A stretch of DNA of 64,000 bases, from NCBI GenBank assembly GCA_964019335.1, contig OZ025677.1:124001-188000 (forward strand). The letters run 5' to 3'. The notes under the pieces are model-generated. The model was not told where the DNA came from and ran no database searches. It was given only the letters and a program-made list of their open reading frames with translations. The translations under genes were made by a program, and so were the position numbers. Of the stretch, positions 18,204 to 29,800 are shown one piece after another. Origin of the DNA: Diplonema japonicum. Its lineage: Eukaryota; Protista; Euglenozoa: Diplonemea. The number at the start of each line of letters is the position of its first letter. Position 1 is the first letter of the stretch.

Positions 18204-18526
18204 TCTTCTTTCTTTTTTTTTTCTTTTCGTTTACTCCGTGTGTCCCCCCCCCCCCCCCCCCCCGTTAATGTGGGGTGGGACGAACGAACCTCCCTGTTGT
18301 GTTTTTTTTTTTTTTATTATTTCTTTTTTTTTAAATACATCGGCTTATAAATGAATAGTAGGAAAAAAAAAAGAAAAGAAGCAGAATATTGTTTGGTTTC
18401 TGTCGTGAAAAAAAAAAGGGAAGTCCACAAGGGGGGAAGGTAAGGAAGGCGCCCCCCTTACCATTCTGGCCCCAAGGGCAAACCGGGGGATGGGAAGAAG
18501 AAGAAGAAGAAGAAAAAAAGAGCTCC

Positions 18527-19084
18527 CTAATCACCACTGCTGCTGTAGATATTTATAGTTACAATTGAACTTTTCCCCCTGTACTTCTTTCTCTTCTTCT
18601 TATCGTTGCTCTGCTCTCCAAACACGCCGGTGATCTCGATCCCTGACACCCAAGCGTTTGCTAGCGTCCATGACCCAAGAATGCGGCCTGTTGGGGAAAC
18701 CTCTGAAAGGACAGCAAGCCTTTCATGGACTCTCGAAGAAGTAGGTCCCGAGGAGTATTCTTGGGCCTGCCTGGCCCAGTGCACGTACTCTTCTGAGAAG
18801 ATACCTTCGCTGAGGGAGATAGGGTCAATCTGAGTTTTGCCCGGAAATCTTTCCCCGGCAACCTTGACATTTAACCCATCCATCTTGAGGAAAGTGCCGA
18901 CCACTGCCCCTTCGATGCTGACTGAGTAGCTCTTGCCTACAGCACTCTTTGTCCTGGCTGCTTCCGTGACTTGGAACACACCGAAATCTTTAATTTGCGT
19001 GGGATTAGCCTCCCTGCTGGATGATTTTCCTCCTTCGCTGCATGCGAAACAGGCGAGGAACAACAGCATGCATTTTATTTTCAT
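18527..19084 (-). CDS. Secreted protein with a T4 gp19 / eCIS (Afp1/Afp5-type) tail-tube-like domain
   Basis: Signal-peptide-like MKIKCMLLFLACFACSEG, then YSVSIEG..VGTF.KMDGL...FPGKT..DPISLSEG....YVHW......ERLAVL.EVSPTG.ILGSWTLANAWVS...SN...IVTINI. This is collinear with the recalled tube-protein pattern F.VEIDG...gF.evsGL...lPGr.ky.nITLkRG.....l..W.....RR.g.i.lld..G....rW....AWP.k....sne.aietlel. Confidence 0.75.
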   Translation of the reverse strand: MKIKCMLLFLACFACSEGGKSSSREANPTQIKDFGVFQVTEAARTKSAVGKSYSVSIEGAVVGTFLKMDGLNVKVAGERFPGKTQIDPISLSEGIFSEEYVHWARQAQEYSSGPTSSRVHERLAVLSEVSPTGRILGSWTLANAWVSGIEITGVFGEQSNDKKKRKKYRGKSSIVTINIYSSSGD

Positions 19085-20125
19085 TTTTTTTTTTAAACTT
19101 ACCGTGTACCTAGTCGGTGTGGTTTAGGTGGGGTTGTGGGAATGAGAAAAGGGGAAAAGAAAAAAAAAAGGCGAGCGGACGTGGGTTTTTTTTTTCTTTT
19201 TTTTTTTTTTTTCCCTTGAGATCTGAGATTTTTCAAGATTTATTTTCCCAAAATCTAAAAAAAAAGGGGGGGGGAAACATGGATTTTGCTCCCCCCCACG
19301 CGTCGCTTTTGGCAAAAATAGTGGACAAACCACCAGGCTGAGACCTAGGCCCCCCGAAAGAAAAAAAAAAGCGGTGCCCTCTTTTCTTTCGGAAAAGGAT
19401 TGACTTTCTTTAACCGTGTAATAATGGGTAATTATTCGCCCCCTTCAGCAGTGAGTGACTCAAACGGCGTAAATGGGTGGAATAATTCATTATTAAAACT
19501 ACATACTTACCGCCAAAACAAGCCATTCTTTAACTCCCGCAAACCCTCTTTTTTTCTTTTTTTTTTTTTTTTCTTCTTCTTGCGGTGAAGAACCTAGCAG
19601 GGGATAAAAAATAATGACTCAAAACATCGGGGCCTTTTCTTTTTCTTTTTTTTTCTTTCGTATTTATTTTAAAAGAGAGACATTGGAACGCCTAAACTTC
19701 TAACCCCAAAATCCGTTTTTTTTTTCTTTCTTTTTTCTTTTTTTTTCTCCCTTGTCCCGTATGGTTTTTAAAACCTGAAAGGTATCTCTTTTTTTTTTTT
19801 TTAAACTCGTGTGCACTTCCTTTACTGGATAGAAAAAACTTAAAAAGACTTAAAAAGCTCAAACACGAAAAGAACACTGTCTACTGCTTTCATGACACAA
19901 ATTTGTGTGCTGTCGGGGCGGTAGGTACCGCAACGCAGTGAGAGTCTTGTTGTACTTTCTCGCGAGAAAAAGAAGGGGGGGGGGAAAGAAGAAAAAAAAA
20001 AAAAAAAAAAGCCAGTATAGAGGTTGGCACGTGTTTCAAGAGTTGCGTATTTCTTTAATTTTTAAAAATGCGTGAAGAGAGGGAACGAGGCCCTCCCTGT
20101 ATCCATTATTTCGGGAGAAGGAAGG

Positions 20126-23888: not shown

Positions 23889-26800
23889 TTAAATAGATAA
23901 TTTTTGGTAAGGCTGGGACTCAGCTTGGGATTTGGGTTGCGTGAAGTAACTCTGCTGCCCACTGCTTGCCGCCTCGAGAGTATGATGAGTCACAACAGTA
24001 GAGCCACTGGTGTACAAGATAGGAGGTGGCGGGCTAGCTTCGTAGACCACCGGAGGTGCCATGCTAGACTGTGGTGGGCCGGGTGCAAACGGGGTCATCT
24101 CCTTCGACTCCTCAACTCTTTCCAAGAACTGTCGCAAGGTAATCTCATCGTCCATGGGCTCGGGATCGGGGACGTAGCCCCTTCTCCTCCACAGCAGCCC
24201 GCCCATCAGCATCATCCCGCAACACAACAGAACAATCAGCAGAATGACCCACCATGGTATGTTCGTCCCGCCGCCATCGTCCTCAACAGGCACCATCACC
24301 GGTACATCAGGCATCCCCACCCCTGGGGCCTGTGGTGGCGCTGGTGTCGGGACCCCAGTGCTCCCCGGTGCCAGCGTGGGGATGTTCGTAGGAGTTGCAG
24401 TGGGCAGTGCAGTGGGGATCATTGTGGCGCCCGGCACCAAAGTTGGAACCCCAGTTGGAACTGCTGTCGGGCCAGCAGTACTCCCTGGGGCCAATGTAGA
24501 TGGCATATTTGTAGGGACCGCCGTTGCCCCCGGCACCAAGGTCGGCATTGCAGTGGGGCTTGCTGTGGGCGAAGCCGTCATGCCTGGAGCCAACGTTGGA
24601 GCATTTGTAGGGAGTGCTGTAGGTGTCTGCGTTGAGCCCGGCGTCAAGGTAGAGGTAGGGACGTTCGTCGGAACAGCTGTTGGAGCTGCCGTTGTTCCAG
24701 GTGCAAGCGTGGTAGGTGCTGCAGTAGGTATCGCTGTGGGGGTGCTTGTTGGAACTGTCGTAGGTACTGCCGTGGACCCTGGTGGCAGGGTGGGGGTAGC
24801 TGTGGGTGTTGCTGTGTTGGGAGAAGTTGTTGGGACTGTTGTGGGCGAAGCGGTTGATCCCGGTGTCAAGGTGGGTACCGATGTGGGCACTGAGGGAGCA
24901 CTCGTTGGCGTCGCAGTTGAACCAGGGGTCAAAGTGGGGGCTGACGTGGGAGCAGAAGTGGATATAGCTGTGGGAACACTCGTTGGAACTGCCGTTGGAA
25001 TGGAAGTAGATCCCGGTGTTAAGGTGGGGACAGCTGTCGGTGTTGATGTTGGTATCGCTGTTGGGGTGCTTGTTGGAACTGTTGTCGGTACTGCCGTGGA
25101 CCCTGGTGTCAAGGTGGGGGTAGCTGTGGGTGTTGCTGTGTCAGGCGAAGGTGTCGGGACTGCCGTGGGTGTTGTGGTGGGGGTGTTTGTTGGAATTGCT
25201 GTTGGCGTTGCGGTTGATCCAGGTGTCAAAGTGGGGACTGACGTGGGAGCAGAAGTAGGTATAGCTGTAGGAACTGCAGTTGGTGAACTCGTAGGAAGAG
25301 CAGTCGATCCAGGGGTCAAGGTGGGGACGGCTGTGGGTGTTGCCGTGTCAGGAGAGGACGTCGGGACTGCCGTGGGTGTTGTGGTAGGGGTGCTTGTTGG
25401 GACTGCCGTTGGTGTTGCGGTTGATCCCGGGGTCAAGGTGGGGACTGACGTGGGAGTACTAGTCGGAGCTGCAGAAGGAACAGCTGTTGGGACAGCAGTG
25501 GGAACTGCAGTTGGTGTACTTGTTGGAACTGCTGTTGGAATGGAGGTGGAACCAGGTGTCAAGGTGGGGACGGATGTGGGCGTTGCTGTGTCAGGAGAAG
25601 ATGTCGGGACTGCCGTGGGTGTTGTGGTGGGGGTGCTTGTTGGAACTGCCGTTGGAATGGAGGTGGACCCAGGTGTCAAGGTGGGGACGGATGTCGGTGT
25701 TGCTGTGTCAGGAGAGGGTGTTGGGACTGCCGTAGGTGTTGTGGTGGGGGTGCTTGTTGGAACTGCCGTCGGTGTGGAGGTGGACCCAGGTGTCAAGGTG
25801 GGGACAGCTGTTGGTGTTGCTGTGTCAGGTGAGGGTGTTGGGACTGCCGTCGGTATTGTAGTTGATCCAGGGGTCACAGTGGGCACAGCTGTGGGAACAC
25901 TCGCCGGGACAGCCGTCGGAGCTGCAGAAGGAACAGCTGTTGGGACAGCAGTGGGAACTGCAGTTGGTGTACTTGTTGGAGCTGCAGTTGGAATGGAGGT
26001 GGACCCAGGTGTCAAGGTGGGGACGGCTGTGGGTGTTGCCGTGTCAGGAGAGGGTGTCGGGACTGCCGTGGGTGTTGTGGTAGGGGTGCTTGTTGGGACT
26101 GCCGTTGGTGTTGCGGTTGATCCCGGGGTCAAGGTGGGGACTGACGTGGGAGTGCTGGTCGGAACTGCAGAAGGAACAGCTGTTGGGACAGCAGTGGGAA
26201 CTGCAGATGGTGTACTTGTTGGAACTGCCGTTGGAATAGAGGTGGAACCAGGTGTCAAGGTGGGGATGGATGTGGGTGTTGCTGTGTCAGGAGAGGACGT
26301 TGGGACTGCCGTGGGTGTCGTGGTGGGAGTGCTTGTTGGAACTGCTGTCGTGGAGGTGGACCCAGGTGTCAAGGTGGGGACAGCCGTTGGCGCTGCTGTG
26401 TCAGGTGAGAGTGTTGGGACTGCCGTTGGAATGGAGGTAGTCACCGGTGTCAAGGTGGGGACGGCTGTGGGTGTAGCTGTGTCAGGAGAAGGCGTCGGGA
26501 CTGCTGTGGGTGTTGTGGTGGGGGTGCTTGTTGGAATTGCTGTTGGTGTTGCGGTTGATCCCGGTGTCAAGGTGGGGACTAACGTGGGAGAACTGGTCGG
26601 AGCCGCAGAAGGAACAGCTGTTGGGACAGCAGTGGGAACTGCAGTTGGTGTACTTGTTGGAACTGCCGTTGGAATGGAGGTGGAACCAGGTGTCAAGGTG
26701 GGGACGGCTGTTGGCGCTGCTGTGTCAGGTGAGGGTGTCGGGACTGCCGTGGGTGTTGAAGTTGATCCCGGTGTCAAGGTGGGGACTGACGTGGGGGTGC

Positions 26801-29800
26801 TGGTCGGAACTGCAGAAGGAAGAGCTGTCGGGGCAGCAGTGGGGACTGCAGTTGGTGTAGAAGTAGACCCGGGTGGGGCAGCTGTTGGCGTCAATGTTGG
26901 GACAGCCGTTGGCGCTGCTGTGTCAGGTGAGAGTGTTGGTGTTGCGGTTGATCCCGGTGTCAAGGTGGGGACTGACGTGGGAGTACTGGTCGGAGCTGCA
27001 GAAGGAACAGCTGTTGGGACAGCAGTGGGAACTGCAGATGGTGTACTTGTTGGAACTGCCGTTGGAATGGAGGTGGAACCAGGTGTCAAGGTGGGGACGG
27101 ATGTGGGCGTTGCTGTGTCAGGAGAAGATGTCGGGACTGCCGTGGGTGTTGTGGTGGGGGTGCTTGTTGGAACTGCCGTCGGTGTGGAGGTGGACCCAGG
27201 TGTCAAGGTGGGGACAGCTGTTGGTGTTGCTGTATCAGGTGAGGCAGTGGGTATTGTAGTTGATCCAGGGGTCACAGTGGGCACAGCTGTGGGAACACTC
27301 GTTGGGGCAGCTGTAGGAGTGTTTGTTGGGACTGCCGTTGGAATGGAGGTGGAACCAGGTGTCAAGGTGGGGACGGCTGTGGGCGTTGCTGTGTCAGGAG
27401 AGGGTGTCGGGACTGCCGTGGGTGTTGTGGTGGGGGTGCTTGTTGGAACTGCTGTCGGTGTGGAGGTGGACCCAGGTGTCAAGGTGGGGACAGCTGTTGG
27501 CGTCGCTGTGTCAGGTGAGGGTGTTGGGACTGCCGTGGGTGTTGTGGTGGGGGTGCTTGTTGGAACTGCCGTTGGAATCGTAGTTGATCCAGGGGTCAAA
27601 GTGGGGGCTGACGTAGGAGTGCTGGTCGGAACAGCAGTGGGAACTGTAGTTGGAGTGCTTGTTGGAATTGCCGTCGGAGTGGAGGTGGACCCAGGTGTCA
27701 AGGTGGGGACGGCTGTTGGTGTAGCTGTGTCAGGAGAGGGTGTTGGGACTGCCGTGGGTGTTGTGGTGGGGGTGCTTGTTGGAACTGCCGTCGGTGTGGA
27801 GGTGGACCCAGGTGTCAAGGTGGGGACGGCTGTTGGTGTAGCTGTGTCAGGAGAGGGTGTTGGGACTGCCGTGGGTGTTGTGGTGGGGGTGCTTGTTGGA
27901 ACTGCCGTCGGTGTGGAGGTGGACCCAGGTGTCAAGGTGGGGACGGCTGTTGGTGTAGCTGTGTCAGGAGAGGGTGTTGGGACTGCCGTGGGTGTTGTGG
28001 TGGGGGTGCTTGTTGGAACTGCCGTCGGTGTGGAGGTGGACCCAGGTGTCGTGGTGGGGACAGCTGTTGGTGTAGCTGTGTCAGGTGAGGGTGTTGGGAC
28101 TGCCGTGGGCGTTGTAGTTGATCCCGGGGTCGAGGTGGGCACTGCTGTCGGTGTGGAAGTGGATCCTGGTGTCAAGGTGGGGACAGCTGTTGGTACCGCC
28201 GTTGGCACGCTTGTTGGGCTTGCCGTTGGTGTTGTTGTTGATCCCGGAGTTGAGGTTGGCACTGACGTGGGAGTGCTGGTTGGAGCTGCTGTAGTCGGAA
28301 CTGCTGTTGGCGTAGAGGTTGATCCGGGTGCCAATGTGGGTATAGCTGTGGGAACACTCGTCGGGACTGCACTTGGTGTGCTCGTTGGAACTGCTGTCGG
28401 TGTGGTGGTGGATCCTGGTGTAAGAGTGGGTGCGGCTGTTGGTGTAGATGTAATTGGAGTAACTGTGGGAGTATTTGTAGGTGATGCAGTAGGGATAGCC
28501 GTGGGAACTGCAGTCGGCGTGCTTGTTGGAAGAGCAGTCGGTGTGGAGGTGGACCCTGGTGTCGTGGTGGGGACAGCTGTCGGAATTGCTGTGTCAGGAG
28601 AGGGTGTTGGGACTGCCGTGGGCGTCCCAGTCGGTGTCGCAGTAGGACCACTTGTTATTCCTGTGTATTTGTTAAAGCACTCGTATTACACTCAACATCT
28701 TTCCCCCCCATTGAAATCACTATAAAACACACCTGGTGCAGAAGTCGGTACAGCGGTAGGAACGGCTGTAGGGGTTGAAGTGGGTGTGGCTGTAGGTGTC
28801 GTTGTTGGCGCAATTGTAGGAACGGCTGTTACTGCTGGGGTGGCCGTGACACCAGGGACTCCCGTCGGTGTTTGTGAAACAGGAGTCAGCGTGTCAGGTG
28901 CCACAGTAGAGGGGGCTTGTGTACCGGGTGCCATTGTGACTGGTGCTTGCGTGTCGGGTGCTGTTGTAAGAGGAGCTTGTGTATCTGGAGACGATGTGAG
29001 AGGCGCCAGTGAGTCAGGTGCCGTTGTCATAGGGGCTTGCGTATTAGGTGACGTTGTAAGAGGAACCTGTGTGTCAGGTGGCATTGTAGAGGGCGACTGT
29101 GTATCAGGAGCTTGTGTATCGGGCGCCGTTGTCGGAGGAGCCTGAGTACCAGGTGACGTTGTAAGAGGTGCTTGCGTGTCAGGTGCTATTGTGAGGGGAG
29201 TTTGCGTATCAGGTGACGTTGTGAGTGGAGTTTGTGTATCAGGTGCCGTTGTTGGGGGAGCTTGCGTGTCAGGTGCCGTTGTGAGGGGGGCCTGGGTGCC
29301 TGGAGTTGTTGTCGAAGGAGCTTGTGTATCAGGTGCCGTTGTCGAAGGAGCTTGCGTGTCAGGTGCCTGTGTATCAGGTGCCGTTGTTAGGGGCGCTTGG
29401 GTACCCGGAGCTGTTGTTGAAGGAGCTTGTGTATCGGGTGCAGCTGTCGGAGGGGCCTGAGTATCGGGTGCCGTTGTTATGGGAGATTGCGTGTCAGGTG
29501 CTGTTGTGAGGGGAGCCTGAGTATCGGGTGCTGTTGTGGCCGGTGCTTGCGTGTCAGGTGCCGTTGTGGAAGGAACCTGAGTATCAGGTGCTGTTGTCGA
29601 AGGAGCTTGTGTATCGGGTGCCGTTGTTGTGGGAGCTTGCGTGTCAGGTGCTGTTGTTTGGGGAGCCTGAGTATCGGGTGCCGTTGTGGCTGGTGCTTGC
29701 GTATCGGGTGCTGTAGTTAGGGGTGCTGTTGTGGTTGGTGCCTGAGTATCGGGTGCCGTTGTTGCAGGTGCTTGTGTATTAGGTGCTGTTGTGAGGGGGG

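What the first reader, a model, noticed from the sequence alone, without database searches (positions are those of the whole stretch)
18527..19084. Phage/eCIS tail-tube (gp19/Afp1-like) gene domesticated as a secreted eukaryotic protein: candidate extrusome or nanotube subunit
Seen: an intact 185-aa ORF, co-oriented with and embedded among ordinary intron-containing eukaryotic genes. It has host-type flanks (pyrimidine tract, AG at 19111-19110, A-run before the ATG) and an N-terminal signal-peptide-like sequence. Established: the ordered motifs (S/E)I(E/D)G..F...GL / PG(K/R) / I(S/T)L..G / W / G....W.l.nAW / terminal beta-strand typify the T4 gp19 / Afp1/Afp5 / Pvc1 inner-tube family. Those subunits stack as hexameric rings, are assembled in the bacterial cytoplasm, lack signal peptides, and are normally encoded next to sheath and baseplate genes. 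None of those genes is recognisable in this window. Relative to the recalled consensus, the ~12-aa 'EYREGG' loop between GL and PG is missing and a basic KKKRKKYRGK stretch is inserted before the last strand. Inference: a horizontally acquired tube protein rerouted into the secretory pathway. Euglenozoans, including diplonemids, have tubular extrusomes, so this may be a structural subunit of a eukaryotic ejectile organelle or of a secreted ring or tube.
Basis: partly seen in the sequence, partly recalled or inferred. Interest (0 to 1): 0.92.

Follow-up and report, generated by a model that had tools for sequence, protein, structure and literature searches.

The report
Phage tail-tube gene in a protist
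The marine protist Diplonema japonicum carries and expresses a very diverged bacterial phage-tail-type "tube" gene with a secretion-signal-like start, one of two such genes in its genome; nothing ties it to the cell's ejectile organelles and some evidence points away from that.

Summary
It is a diverged homologue of the contractile-injection-system inner-tube family (Pfam PF06841 E 2e-5, just under the cut-off; hhalign 91%). Its predicted fold matches Pvc1, Afp1, AlgoCIS tubes and Hcp.

The hydrophobic signal-like N-terminus is therefore translated. Codon usage is host-like.

New here:
- A second, well-conserved paralogue (94.6 bits, 50-57% identical to bacterial eCIS tubes) lies on contig C3, is also transcribed and also has a signal-like leader. 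The scan flagged it separately (s1-857577).
- Sheath, gp25, VgrG, baseplate-J and Hcp families find nothing in the whole genome.
- The window copy has lost about half of the beta-hairpin that plugs one tube ring into the next, and has gained a polybasic loop.
- Bacteria also have orphan, signal-bearing tube paralogues.

I read it as a domesticated, probably secreted tube-fold protein that more likely forms rings than long tubes. The extrusome idea is untested. It is weakened because extrusomes are pan-euglenozoan while this gene has no detectable orthologue.

The parts
19112..19170 (-). Polypyrimidine tract upstream of the trans-splice acceptor
   Evidence: Read directly from the sequence. It lies immediately 5' of the AG used for spliced-leader addition.
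19110..19111 (-). AG trans-splice acceptor, where the spliced leader is added
   Evidence: The X9 contig matches the genome up to 19110 and then carries 22 letters equal to the 3' part of the spliced leader. The leader 23-mer occurs 214 times in the genome and 0 times in the control. The leader's last G is ambiguous with g19110.
19085..19109 (-). 5' UTR of about 25 nt, ending in an A-run
   Evidence: There is no ATG between the leader junction and 19084.
19037..19084 (-). Signal-peptide-like N-terminus, residues 1-16: MKIK, then an 11-residue hydrophobic core, then A-C-S
   Evidence: Maximum 9-residue Kyte-Doolittle hydropathy is 2.86 at residue 5. The core is too short for a membrane anchor, and A at -3 with S at -1 fit cleavage after residue 16 (and my reading of the sequence). 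No SignalP was available, so this is inferred.
18938..19036 (-). Low-confidence linker, residues 17-49, with no counterpart in bacterial tubes
   Evidence: AF2 pLDDT is below 50 for residues 1-38 and 45-56 up to residue 50. The region is unaligned.
18530..18937 (-). Tail-tube / Hcp-type beta-sandwich domain, residues 50-185
   Evidence: PF06841 covers residues 79-160. hhalign covers 50-157 at 91%. AF2 core pLDDT is 80-92. Foldseek and VIA hits to Pvc1, Afp1, AlgoCIS tubes and Hcp span residues 48-185.
18827..18868 (-). Truncated beta-hairpin, residues 73-86: the remnant of the ring-stacking 'plug' hairpin
   Evidence: There is a roughly 14-residue gap against all relatives. Model strands are 73-76 and 83-86 here, against 49-57 and 65-74 in the C3 paralogue model. 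The hairpin's role is taken from PMC10304247.
18572..18601 (-). Polybasic insert KKKRKKYRGK, residues 162-171, before the last strand
   Evidence: It is an insertion relative to every relative aligned. It is a low-confidence loop in the model.
18527..18529 (-). Stop codon
18356..18526 (-). 3' UTR, at least 170 nt, containing a (TTC)n repeat
   Evidence: X9 contigs 27 and 26 continue through 18527 and cover 18356-18483 at high depth. The poly(A) site was not resolved.

Best explanation
This is a nuclear gene of Diplonema japonicum that descends from a bacterial extracellular-contractile-injection-system (eCIS, Afp1/Pvc1-type) inner-tube gene. The host has fully adopted it.

Shown: the mRNA receives the spliced leader 25 nt upstream of the ATG. 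Codon usage is host-like. The protein keeps the tube/Hcp beta-sandwich fold.

Inferred: the N-terminal 16 residues act as an ER signal peptide. The mature protein of about 169 aa (a floppy linker plus the tube domain) would then enter the secretory pathway. The hairpin that plugs one ring into the next is cut to about half its length, and no sheath, baseplate, spike or Hcp gene exists in the genome. I therefore infer that it no longer builds a long stacked tube. It more likely acts as an Hcp-like ring or small oligomer, and the new polybasic loop would let it bind acidic partners such as matrix polysaccharide, membranes or cargo.

It is one of two tube-derived genes. The C3 paralogue keeps the full hairpin and is the better candidate for real tube formation. 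The window copy most likely arose from the same acquisition and then diverged strongly.

How sure I am of each step: transferred tube-fold gene that is nuclear and expressed, about 0.95; secretory routing, about 0.7; ring rather than stacked tube, about 0.4.
For: Homology and fold:
- PF06841 E 2e-5 and TIGR02241
- hhalign 91%, E 1.1e-6
- AF2 core pLDDT 80-92
- Foldseek top six hits are eCIS chains, mostly inner-tube proteins
- VIA Z 8-10

Host gene, not a contaminant:
- The spliced leader is joined at AG 19111-19110 in an RNA-like run. Depth there is 457, against 39 for the neighbouring gene and about 16 for intergenic DNA.
- The leader occurs 214 times in the genome.
- DNA-type runs from two other studies cover the locus at the same depth as its neighbours.
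- The protein is held in EukProt.
- GC3 is 0.565, against 0.61-0.68 for neighbouring host genes and 0.885 for a donor-type gene.
- The neighbours are a GAF-PDE, an ankyrin-ubiquitin gene and a CAP-domain gene.
- The gene meets the same HGT criteria used for D. papillatum: a host contig plus a leader-bearing transcript (PMC10161547).

Second copy: the paralogue scores 94.6 bits, is a complete Trinity ORF from D. japonicum, and is 50-57% identical to bacterial tubes.

Shared origin (weak): the window protein's best family match is the C3 paralogue. It fits that sub-family's profile better than the actinobacterial one, 19.1 v 7.4 bits.

No machine parts: sheath, sheath C-terminal domain, gp25, VgrG, baseplate-J and Hcp families give 0 hits genome-wide.

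Hairpin loss: with its stacking role from PMC10304247.

Signal-like N-terminus.

Bacterial precedent for orphan signal-bearing tubes.
Against: - No signal-peptide predictor was available, so secretion is inferred from hydropathy and the -3/-1 rule only.
- Oligomeric state was not modelled, because only monomer prediction was possible. Hcp proteins with short hairpins still stack inside a sheath, so loss of stacking is an inference.
- The Pfam score is 3.4 bits under the gathering threshold.
- The tree cannot place the protein (branch length about 10), so one transfer versus two is unresolved. An actinobacterial-type tube is about equally similar pairwise (38.5 v 36.6 bits).
- No orthologue exists for a selection test, so ongoing functional constraint is not shown.
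- The nature and growth stage of run X9 are not on record.
Confidence: 0.6

Rival explanations
1. One reading: the protein is a structural subunit of the tubular extrusomes, or of another ejectile organelle, of the diplonemid.
For: It has a signal-like leader, and extrusomes are made in the secretory pathway. D. japonicum makes tubular extrusomes in its sessile and swimming stages (PMC5845003). The molecular make-up of euglenozoan extrusomes is unknown, since no proteome was found.
Against: - Tubular extrusomes are a euglenozoan apomorphy, yet the gene has no detectable orthologue anywhere.
- The C3 paralogue has no other EukProt-labelled relative among its hits.
- Nothing similar appears in the D. 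papillatum supplementary tables.
- From my own knowledge, a phage-type tube is about 9 nm wide. The extrusomes are membrane-bound cylinders with cruciate cores, imaged at a 0.1-um scale bar.
- The stacking hairpin is truncated.
- The transcript is abundant in a run whose culture stage is not on record.
Confidence: 0.07
2. The window protein works together with the C3 paralogue. The C3 protein would form sheath-less rings or a short tube in the secretory pathway. The hairpin-less window protein would act as a terminal or adaptor ring, by analogy with the several tube paralogues (Afp1, Afp5, Afp7) of eCIS particles.
For: Both paralogues have signal-like leaders and both are transcribed. The C3 copy keeps the full hairpin and the N-terminal segment. 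A ring lacking the plug hairpin could only sit at one end of a stack, which I infer from PMC10304247.
Against: There is no evidence of interaction or co-expression. The genes are on different contigs.
Confidence: 0.1
3. It is a decaying or functionless relic. A duplicated or transferred tube gene is still transcribed but is drifting without a role.
For: Divergence is extreme: branch length about 10 and no hit in 1.84 billion representatives. A structurally important hairpin has been lost. The insert and linker are low-complexity and low-confidence.
Against: - The ORF is intact across 185 codons while the surrounding DNA is full of stops.
- The core still folds confidently into the tube fold.
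- The family's conserved core motifs are kept.
- Transcript depth is high relative to the neighbouring gene.
- Codon usage is host-adapted.
Confidence: 0.12
4. It is directed at bacteria. A secreted tube mimic would bind to or interfere with the contractile systems of prey or attacking bacteria, or be delivered to the host's own Holosporales endosymbionts.
For: It is of bacterial origin and is apparently a species-restricted gene in a host that harbours two endosymbionts. The polybasic loop could bind bacterial surfaces, which is my inference.
Against: The endosymbionts lie free in the cytoplasm without a host membrane (PMC5845003), so an ER-routed protein would not reach them. There is no evidence for any interference mechanism.
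Confidence: 0.06
5. It is a contaminant or an assembly chimera: a bacterial gene wrongly joined to protist DNA.
For: The family is otherwise bacterial or phage. The short-read contigs break at the flanking low-complexity repeats, so they do not themselves bridge to the neighbouring genes.
Against: - The transcript carries the spliced leader.
- GC3 is host-like and codon fit is host-like.
- The flanks are host-type.
- DNA depth equals that of the neighbours in runs from two studies.
- The assembly is HiFi plus Hi-C and was screened for cobionts.
- There is no close bacterial relative at all.
Confidence: 0.01

Closest known systems
eCIS inner-tube proteins (Afp1 of Serratia AFP, Pvc1 of Photorhabdus PVC, the AlgoCIS tube; Pfam PF06841 Phage_T4_gp19)
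   Same: Same beta-sandwich-plus-helix fold: Foldseek E 1e-4 and probability 1.00, VIA Z 8-9. The conserved motifs appear in the same order. Profile similarity is significant. The C3 paralogue is a clear member at 94.6 bits and is 50-57% identical to Myxococcota-type tubes that sit next to sheath genes.
   Different: - It is encoded in a eukaryotic nucleus and expressed with a spliced leader.
- It has an N-terminal signal-like peptide plus a 33-residue linker.
- The stacking hairpin is shortened by about 14 residues.
- It has a polybasic insert before the last strand.
- No sheath, baseplate, spike or cap genes exist anywhere in the genome.
- The Pfam score is just under the gathering threshold.
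T6SS Hcp
   Same: It gives the best structural Z-scores, 9-10 with rmsd about 3 A over about 106-119 residues. Hcp is the tube-fold protein known, from established knowledge, to exist as free hexameric rings, to be exported, and to carry cargo in its lumen. That is the nearest functional analogy for a sheath-independent ring.
   Different: There is no sequence match to PF05638 in the genome. By sequence the gene descends from the PF06841 lineage. Hcp is exported by the T6SS itself, not by a signal peptide.
Orphan, signal-peptide-bearing tube paralogues in bacteria (for example P0006 of a Nannocystaceae MAG; also P0052, P0060, P0073, P0092)
   Same: These are tube-domain proteins with an added N-terminal hydrophobic leader. 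P0006 lies away from any sheath gene, next to lspA, an OmpA-family gene and a metallo-beta-lactamase, while the same genome's sheath matches are on another contig. This is the same architecture as the two diplonemid genes.
   Different: They are bacterial and Sec-type, they keep the full hairpin, and their function is unknown. They are scattered on the tree, so they arose several times and are not shown to be the donors.
Bacteria-to-diplonemid horizontally transferred genes (at least 96 genes in D. papillatum, PMC10161547)
   Same: The same kind of evidence applies: a host contig, a leader-bearing transcript and nearest relatives that are bacterial.
   Different: The genes reported there are mostly metabolic, for example CAZymes and detoxification. 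No phage-tail or eCIS structural gene was found in that paper's supplementary tables.

Membership tests
PF06841 / eCIS-phage contractile-tail inner tube | Statistically significant profile similarity to the family | tested here: met
   Pfam E 2e-5. TIGR02241 E 5e-4. hhalign 91%, E 1.1e-6 against a profile built without the query. A local hmmsearch gave 19.1 bits, E 1e-7.
PF06841 / eCIS-phage contractile-tail inner tube | Score above Pfam's curated gathering threshold of 28.2 bits | tested here: not met
   The window protein scores 24.8 bits, or 22.5 bits in the six-frame genome search. The C3 paralogue passes easily at 94.6 bits.
PF06841 / eCIS-phage contractile-tail inner tube | Tube beta-sandwich flanked by an alpha-helix | tested here: met
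   AF2 core pLDDT 80-92. Foldseek top hits are 6j0b, 7adz, 7aeb and 6rap. VIA Z 8-10.
PF06841 / eCIS-phage contractile-tail inner tube | Extended beta-hairpin that plugs into the neighbouring ring, giving ring stacking | tested here: not met
   About 14 residues are missing. The strands are 4+4 residues, against 9+10 in the C3 paralogue model. The hairpin's role is from PMC10304247.
PF06841 / eCIS-phage contractile-tail inner tube | Encoded with sheath, baseplate, spike and cap genes | tested here: not met
   PF04984, PF17482, PF04965, PF05954 and PF04865 give 0 matches in the 62.5-Mb genome, while the bacterial control genomes were detected.
PF06841 / eCIS-phage contractile-tail inner tube | Assembles into hexameric rings stacked into a tube | not testable with these tools
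   Only monomer prediction was available. No multimer modelling or experiment was possible.
T6SS Hcp (PF05638) | Sequence membership | tested here: not met
   PF05638 gives no match in the genome. Pfam lists only PF06841 for the protein. The similarity is structural only, Z 9-10.
Eukaryotic ER signal peptide / secreted protein | An n-region, a hydrophobic core of 7-15 residues, and small residues at -3 and -1 | tested here: inconclusive
   MKIK, then an 11-residue core (hydropathy 2.86), then A-C-S before E17. This fits by rule of thumb, but no SignalP was available. The mRNA does include this N-terminus.
Euglenozoan tubular extrusome component | Conserved across extrusome-bearing euglenozoans | tested here: not met
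   No orthologue appears in 1.84 billion representatives or in the word-index search. Only the D. japonicum entry carried a EukProt label among the C3 paralogue's hits. It is my inference, not something I checked, that those libraries hold other diplonemid transcriptomes.
Euglenozoan tubular extrusome component | Expressed in the sessile and swimming stages and located in extrusomes | not testable with these tools
   The stage of the RNA run is not on record, and there are no localisation data.
Bacteria-to-eukaryote horizontally transferred nuclear gene | On a host contig among host genes, with a host-type transcript (spliced leader) and nearest relatives that are bacterial | tested here: met
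   for the host context and the leader. for the bacterial relatives.

The most novel reading that the evidence does not exclude
Solitary tube-fold proteins exported by a signal peptide may form a recurrent class that works without a sheath. They would have arisen several times in bacteria and been taken over by a predatory protist. In that protist the two paralogues, one with a full hairpin and one hairpin-less and polybasic, would co-assemble in a secretory organelle into a ring or short nanotube used during prey or host invasion, possibly as an extrusome accessory.
Probability: 0.12. Interest if true: 0.88.

Novelty: new variant of a known kind. Interest (0 to 1): 0.62.

Why it matters
Genes for structural parts of contractile phage tails and eCIS particles are, as far as I know and as far as the searched paper library shows, not known as working nuclear genes of eukaryotes. 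Here two such genes are shown to be nuclear and transcribed. Both are stripped of every partner gene and both carry signal-like leaders.

That makes a concrete question testable: what can a tube subunit do on its own in a secretory pathway? It could act as a ring carrier, a scaffold or a nanotube.

Orphan signal-bearing tube paralogues in bacteria suggest that this use of the fold is wider than one protist. The finding also adds a non-metabolic, structural case to the catalogue of bacterial genes acquired by diplonemids, an abundant but poorly understood group of ocean predators and parasites.

Tried and rejected
- PHROGs gave no hit.
- The PDB sequence search gave only spurious antibody matches at E above 0.2.
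- The word-index search and the exhaustive phmmer search with the window protein found only the protein itself.
- The ESM Atlas gave only weak look-alikes, PF06841 and phage clusters at 0.85-0.86, which I treat as a lead only.
- A maximum-likelihood tree could not place the window protein, because its branch is saturated and the careful search did not finish. I make no claim from it beyond the C3 paralogue nesting among eCIS tubes and the scatter of the signal-bearing bacterial forms.
- I tested the idea of a separate origin from actinobacterial tubes, prompted by an exact WTLANAWVS 9-mer in L043 and L044. I set it aside because the actinobacterial profile fits worse than the Myxococcota-type profile. 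It is not excluded.
- Symbiont targeting was considered and down-weighted, because the symbionts have no host membrane around them.
- Run X1, from another organism, held only low-complexity fragments and no orthologue.
I obtained bacterial context through the search for related loci and the genome search instead.
- One genome search failed on a parameter and was repeated correctly.
Full report
**What is there.** window:18527-19084 on the minus strand is an intact ATG-to-stop ORF of 185 codons. It lies downstream of a long AT-rich non-coding stretch and upstream of an 836-aa ORF on the same strand. Other genes in the window are ordinary eukaryotic ones: a GAF-domain cyclic-nucleotide phosphodiesterase, an ankyrin/ubiquitin protein and a CAP-domain/extensin-like protein. 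The window is contig C30 of a 62.5-Mb, 132-contig assembly. The organism is Diplonema japonicum. The paralogue described below is identical to EukProt entry EP01064_Diplonema_japonicum_P007989, and the window protein itself is also held in EukProt. The assembly matches the published YPF1604 genome of 62.3 Mb, built from HiFi plus Hi-C and screened for cobionts (PMC13598402).

**Is it a tail-tube homologue?** Yes, but a very diverged one.
- Pfam reports only PF06841 (Phage_T4_gp19), E 2e-5 and 24.8 bits against a gathering score of 28.2, over residues 79-160.
- NCBIfam gives TIGR02241 at E 5e-4. PHROGs gives nothing.
- A profile of 45 bacterial relatives that excludes the query gives hhalign probability 91%, E 1.1e-6, over residues 50-157.
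- An AlphaFold2 model built on a 52-sequence alignment has mean pLDDT 69.6. The core (residues 50-155) is at 80-92, and the first 38 residues are disordered.
- Foldseek against the PDB puts eCIS chains first, mostly inner-tube proteins: PVC 6j0b at E 1.2e-4, AlgoCIS 7adz and 7aeb, AFP 6rap and Streptomyces CIS. Hcp and T4 gp19 follow, all at probability about 1.00.
- VIA-align gives Z 9-10 to Hcp proteins and Z 8-9 to eCIS tubes over residues 48-185.
The family motifs occur in order, about 14 residues of the 'EVIEYQDGDD-L' segment are missing, and KKKRKKYRGK is inserted before the last strand.

**Is it a real, expressed host gene?** Yes.
- I laid contigs of four public runs on window:17900-19900. 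In run X9 a 648-nt contig at depth 457 covers 18527-19110. The neighbouring gene is at depth 39 and intergenic DNA at about 16.
- Beyond 19110 that contig carries 22 letters whose reverse complement is GCTACAGTTTCTGTACTTTATT. With a terminal G, this 23-mer occurs 214 times in the genome and never in the reversed control. Aligned copies share a block of about 38 nt ending in ...CTGTACTTTATTG. That fits the 39-nt spliced leader described for Diplonema (PMC10161547).
It leaves a 25-nt 5' UTR with no earlier ATG, so the hydrophobic N-terminus is part of the translated mRNA.
- Runs X4 and X6, from two other studies, hold the locus at the same depth as the flanking genes (45 v 52 and 17 v 17.7). That is how genomic DNA behaves.
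- GC3 is 0.565, against 0.61-0.68 for neighbouring host genes and 0.885 for a donor-type bacterial gene. Codon preferences fit the host set better than a myxobacterial set.
- Contamination or a chimeric join is therefore effectively excluded.

**A second, better preserved copy.**
- A genome-wide six-frame search with PF06841 finds one more gene, at G000:C3:617928-618335, scoring 94.7 bits. Read from its ATG (L002:1423-1920) it encodes 165 aa. It matches PF06841 end to end at 94.6 bits. It is a complete Trinity ORF in EukProt.
- Its nearest relatives are 144-aa bacterial 'phage tail-like proteins' at 50-57% identity, from Myxococcota/'Deltaproteobacteria', Pseudomonadota and Anaerolineae MAGs.
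- It begins MASLLLVTAALATQLQS, again signal-like (hydropathy 2.68). It lies about 160 nt downstream of a homocysteine-S-methyltransferase/EF-hand gene.
- Its AF2 model is confident, with pLDDT 85.7, and shows a long hairpin with strands 49-57 and 65-74.
- The two diplonemid proteins are 28% identical (E 4e-8 pairwise). Another first-stage note of this scan (s1-857577, 498 letters) evidently describes this paralogue.

**Origin.**
- Among 101 family members the window protein's best match is the C3 paralogue, at 22.9 bits, with the next best at 19.3.
- A metagenome scan turned up actinobacterial-type eCIS tubes (L043, L044). They lie next to an ORF that looks like a sheath gene, share an exact WTLANAWVS 9-mer, and are 32% identical to the window protein.
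- A profile of that sub-family fits the window protein worse than the Myxococcota-type profile does: 7.4 v 19.1 bits, and hhalign 43% v 84%.
- A tree could not help, because the window protein's branch is saturated.
- I therefore favour one acquisition followed by duplication and runaway divergence of the window copy, but only weakly. Two separate transfers are not excluded.

**No machine around it.** Sheath (PF04984, PF17482), gp25 (PF04965), VgrG/gpD (PF05954), baseplate J (PF04865) and T6SS Hcp (PF05638) all give zero matches in the whole genome, while the control genomes are detected. Whatever these two proteins do, they do it without a contractile apparatus.

**What the changes imply.**
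- In contractile tails the tube beta-sandwich carries an extended beta-hairpin. The six hairpins of a ring form a plug that inserts into the N-terminal rim of the next ring and holds the stack together (phage P1 tail, with the fold stated to be conserved in gp19, Pvc1 and Afp1; PMC10304247).
- The window protein's deletion falls at exactly that position. Its model keeps only two 4-residue strands there, against 9 and 10 residues in the C3 model.
- The N-terminal segment that forms the rim in canonical tubes is replaced here by a longer, low-confidence linker.
- I infer that the window protein has lost most of its ability to stack into long tubes. It more likely behaves like a free ring, as Hcp does, or as a small oligomer.
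- The polybasic loop is new. It could bind acidic ligands or be a dibasic processing site. This is speculation.
- The mature protein has no cysteines and no N-glycosylation sequons.

**Signal peptides on tube proteins are not unique to the protist.**
- Several relatives recovered with the C3 paralogue carry N-terminal hydrophobic leaders: P0006, P0052, P0060, P0073, P0092 and P0096.
- P0006, which has the highest listed identity to the C3 protein (57%), comes from a Nannocystaceae MAG. There it sits beside lspA, an OmpA-family gene and a metallo-beta-lactamase. None of the ORFs scanned in 10 kb upstream or 2.3 kb downstream matched a sheath or baseplate family.
- The same genome has two more tube genes, close to its sheath matches on another contig.
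- The closest relatives of P0006 in other Myxococcota (69-79% identical) start MPxRR without a leader and lie within about 1 kb of a sheath gene.
- The signal-bearing forms are scattered on the tree. Orphan, exported tube paralogues have therefore arisen repeatedly from canonical eCIS tubes.
The leader of the diplonemid genes could be either inherited or new.

**The extrusome hypothesis.**
- D. japonicum does form tubular extrusomes, but only in the starvation-induced sessile and swimming stages. Such extrusomes are described as an apomorphy of all Euglenozoa (PMC5845003; PMC13598402).
- A core structural subunit should then be widely conserved. Yet the exhaustive search finds no orthologue of the window protein. 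Only the D. japonicum entry carried a EukProt label among the C3 paralogue's hits. The D. papillatum supplementary tables mention no phage-tail protein.
- That the libraries contain other diplonemid transcriptomes is my assumption from knowledge of EukProt. I did not check it.
- Together with the truncated stacking hairpin and the size mismatch, this makes a core extrusome role unlikely. A species-specific accessory role is not excluded.
- Delivery to the endosymbionts is also unlikely, because they lie free in the cytoplasm without a host membrane.

**Verdict.** Secretory routing is plausible but unproven, and the extrusome link is unsupported. The most likely mechanism is a signal-peptide-routed tube-fold protein that acts as a ring or oligomer and not as a stacked tube, possibly together with its hairpin-bearing paralogue. 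No paper in the searched library reports PF06841-type genes in eukaryotes. I class it as a new variant of a known kind and score interest at 0.62.

**Tool notes.**
- The single read-laying run was used on the window locus, so leader addition on the C3 transcript was not checked.

Noticed in passing
G000:C3:617928-618335 (+), which is L002:1423-1920: A second tail-tube gene in the same genome. It encodes 165 aa, scores 94.6 bits on PF06841, and is 50-57% identical to bacterial eCIS tubes. It has a signal-like MASLLLVTAALA start and the full stacking hairpin, and it is present as a complete ORF in the EukProt D. japonicum transcriptome. It is probably the subject of first-stage note s1-857577.
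   Followed up: yes
L005, L006, L007, L008 (G000:C1:315922, C1:890271, C2:58530, C2:150572) and about 210 other places: The spliced-leader exon of about 38 nt is dispersed at 214 sites. In the four copies I aligned, similarity stops right after ...TTTATTG and the downstream sequence differs each time. These look more like retroposed leader-bearing mRNAs or leader-tagged elements than tandem SL-RNA genes.
   Followed up: partly
L009:10001-10492 (Nannocystaceae MAG, G001:C233); also proteins P0052, P0060, P0073, P0092, P0096: Bacterial tube-domain proteins with N-terminal signal-like leaders. P0006 is an orphan next to lspA, an OmpA-family gene and a metallo-beta-lactamase, while its genome's sheath matches are on another contig. 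This looks like a recurrent, undescribed class of exported solitary tube proteins.
   Followed up: partly
window:23889-28725: Two very long ORFs overlap on opposite strands: 24244-28725 (+), 1493 aa, and 23889-28334 (-), 1481 aa. The + ORF has no Pfam match. This may be a repetitive or compositionally biased gene.
   Followed up: no
window:15693-18203 (-): The 836-aa gene immediately downstream of the tube gene has no Pfam family at E below 0.01. It contains proline- and serine-rich low-complexity stretches.
   Followed up: partly
window:19100-23900: There is a non-coding stretch of nearly 5 kb at 26-45% GC, rich in homopolymer A/T runs, upstream of the tube gene. Many short-read contigs break or mis-join there, so it is a repeat family.
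   Followed up: no
window:28692-31673 (-): A 993-aa ORF that combines a CAP (cysteine-rich secretory protein) domain with an extensin-like proline-rich region. It is another likely secreted protein in the neighbourhood.
   Followed up: no
L016 (G217:C17:8210-9172): In one Myxococcota genome two nearly identical eCIS tube genes lie in tandem next to the sheath gene.
   Followed up: no
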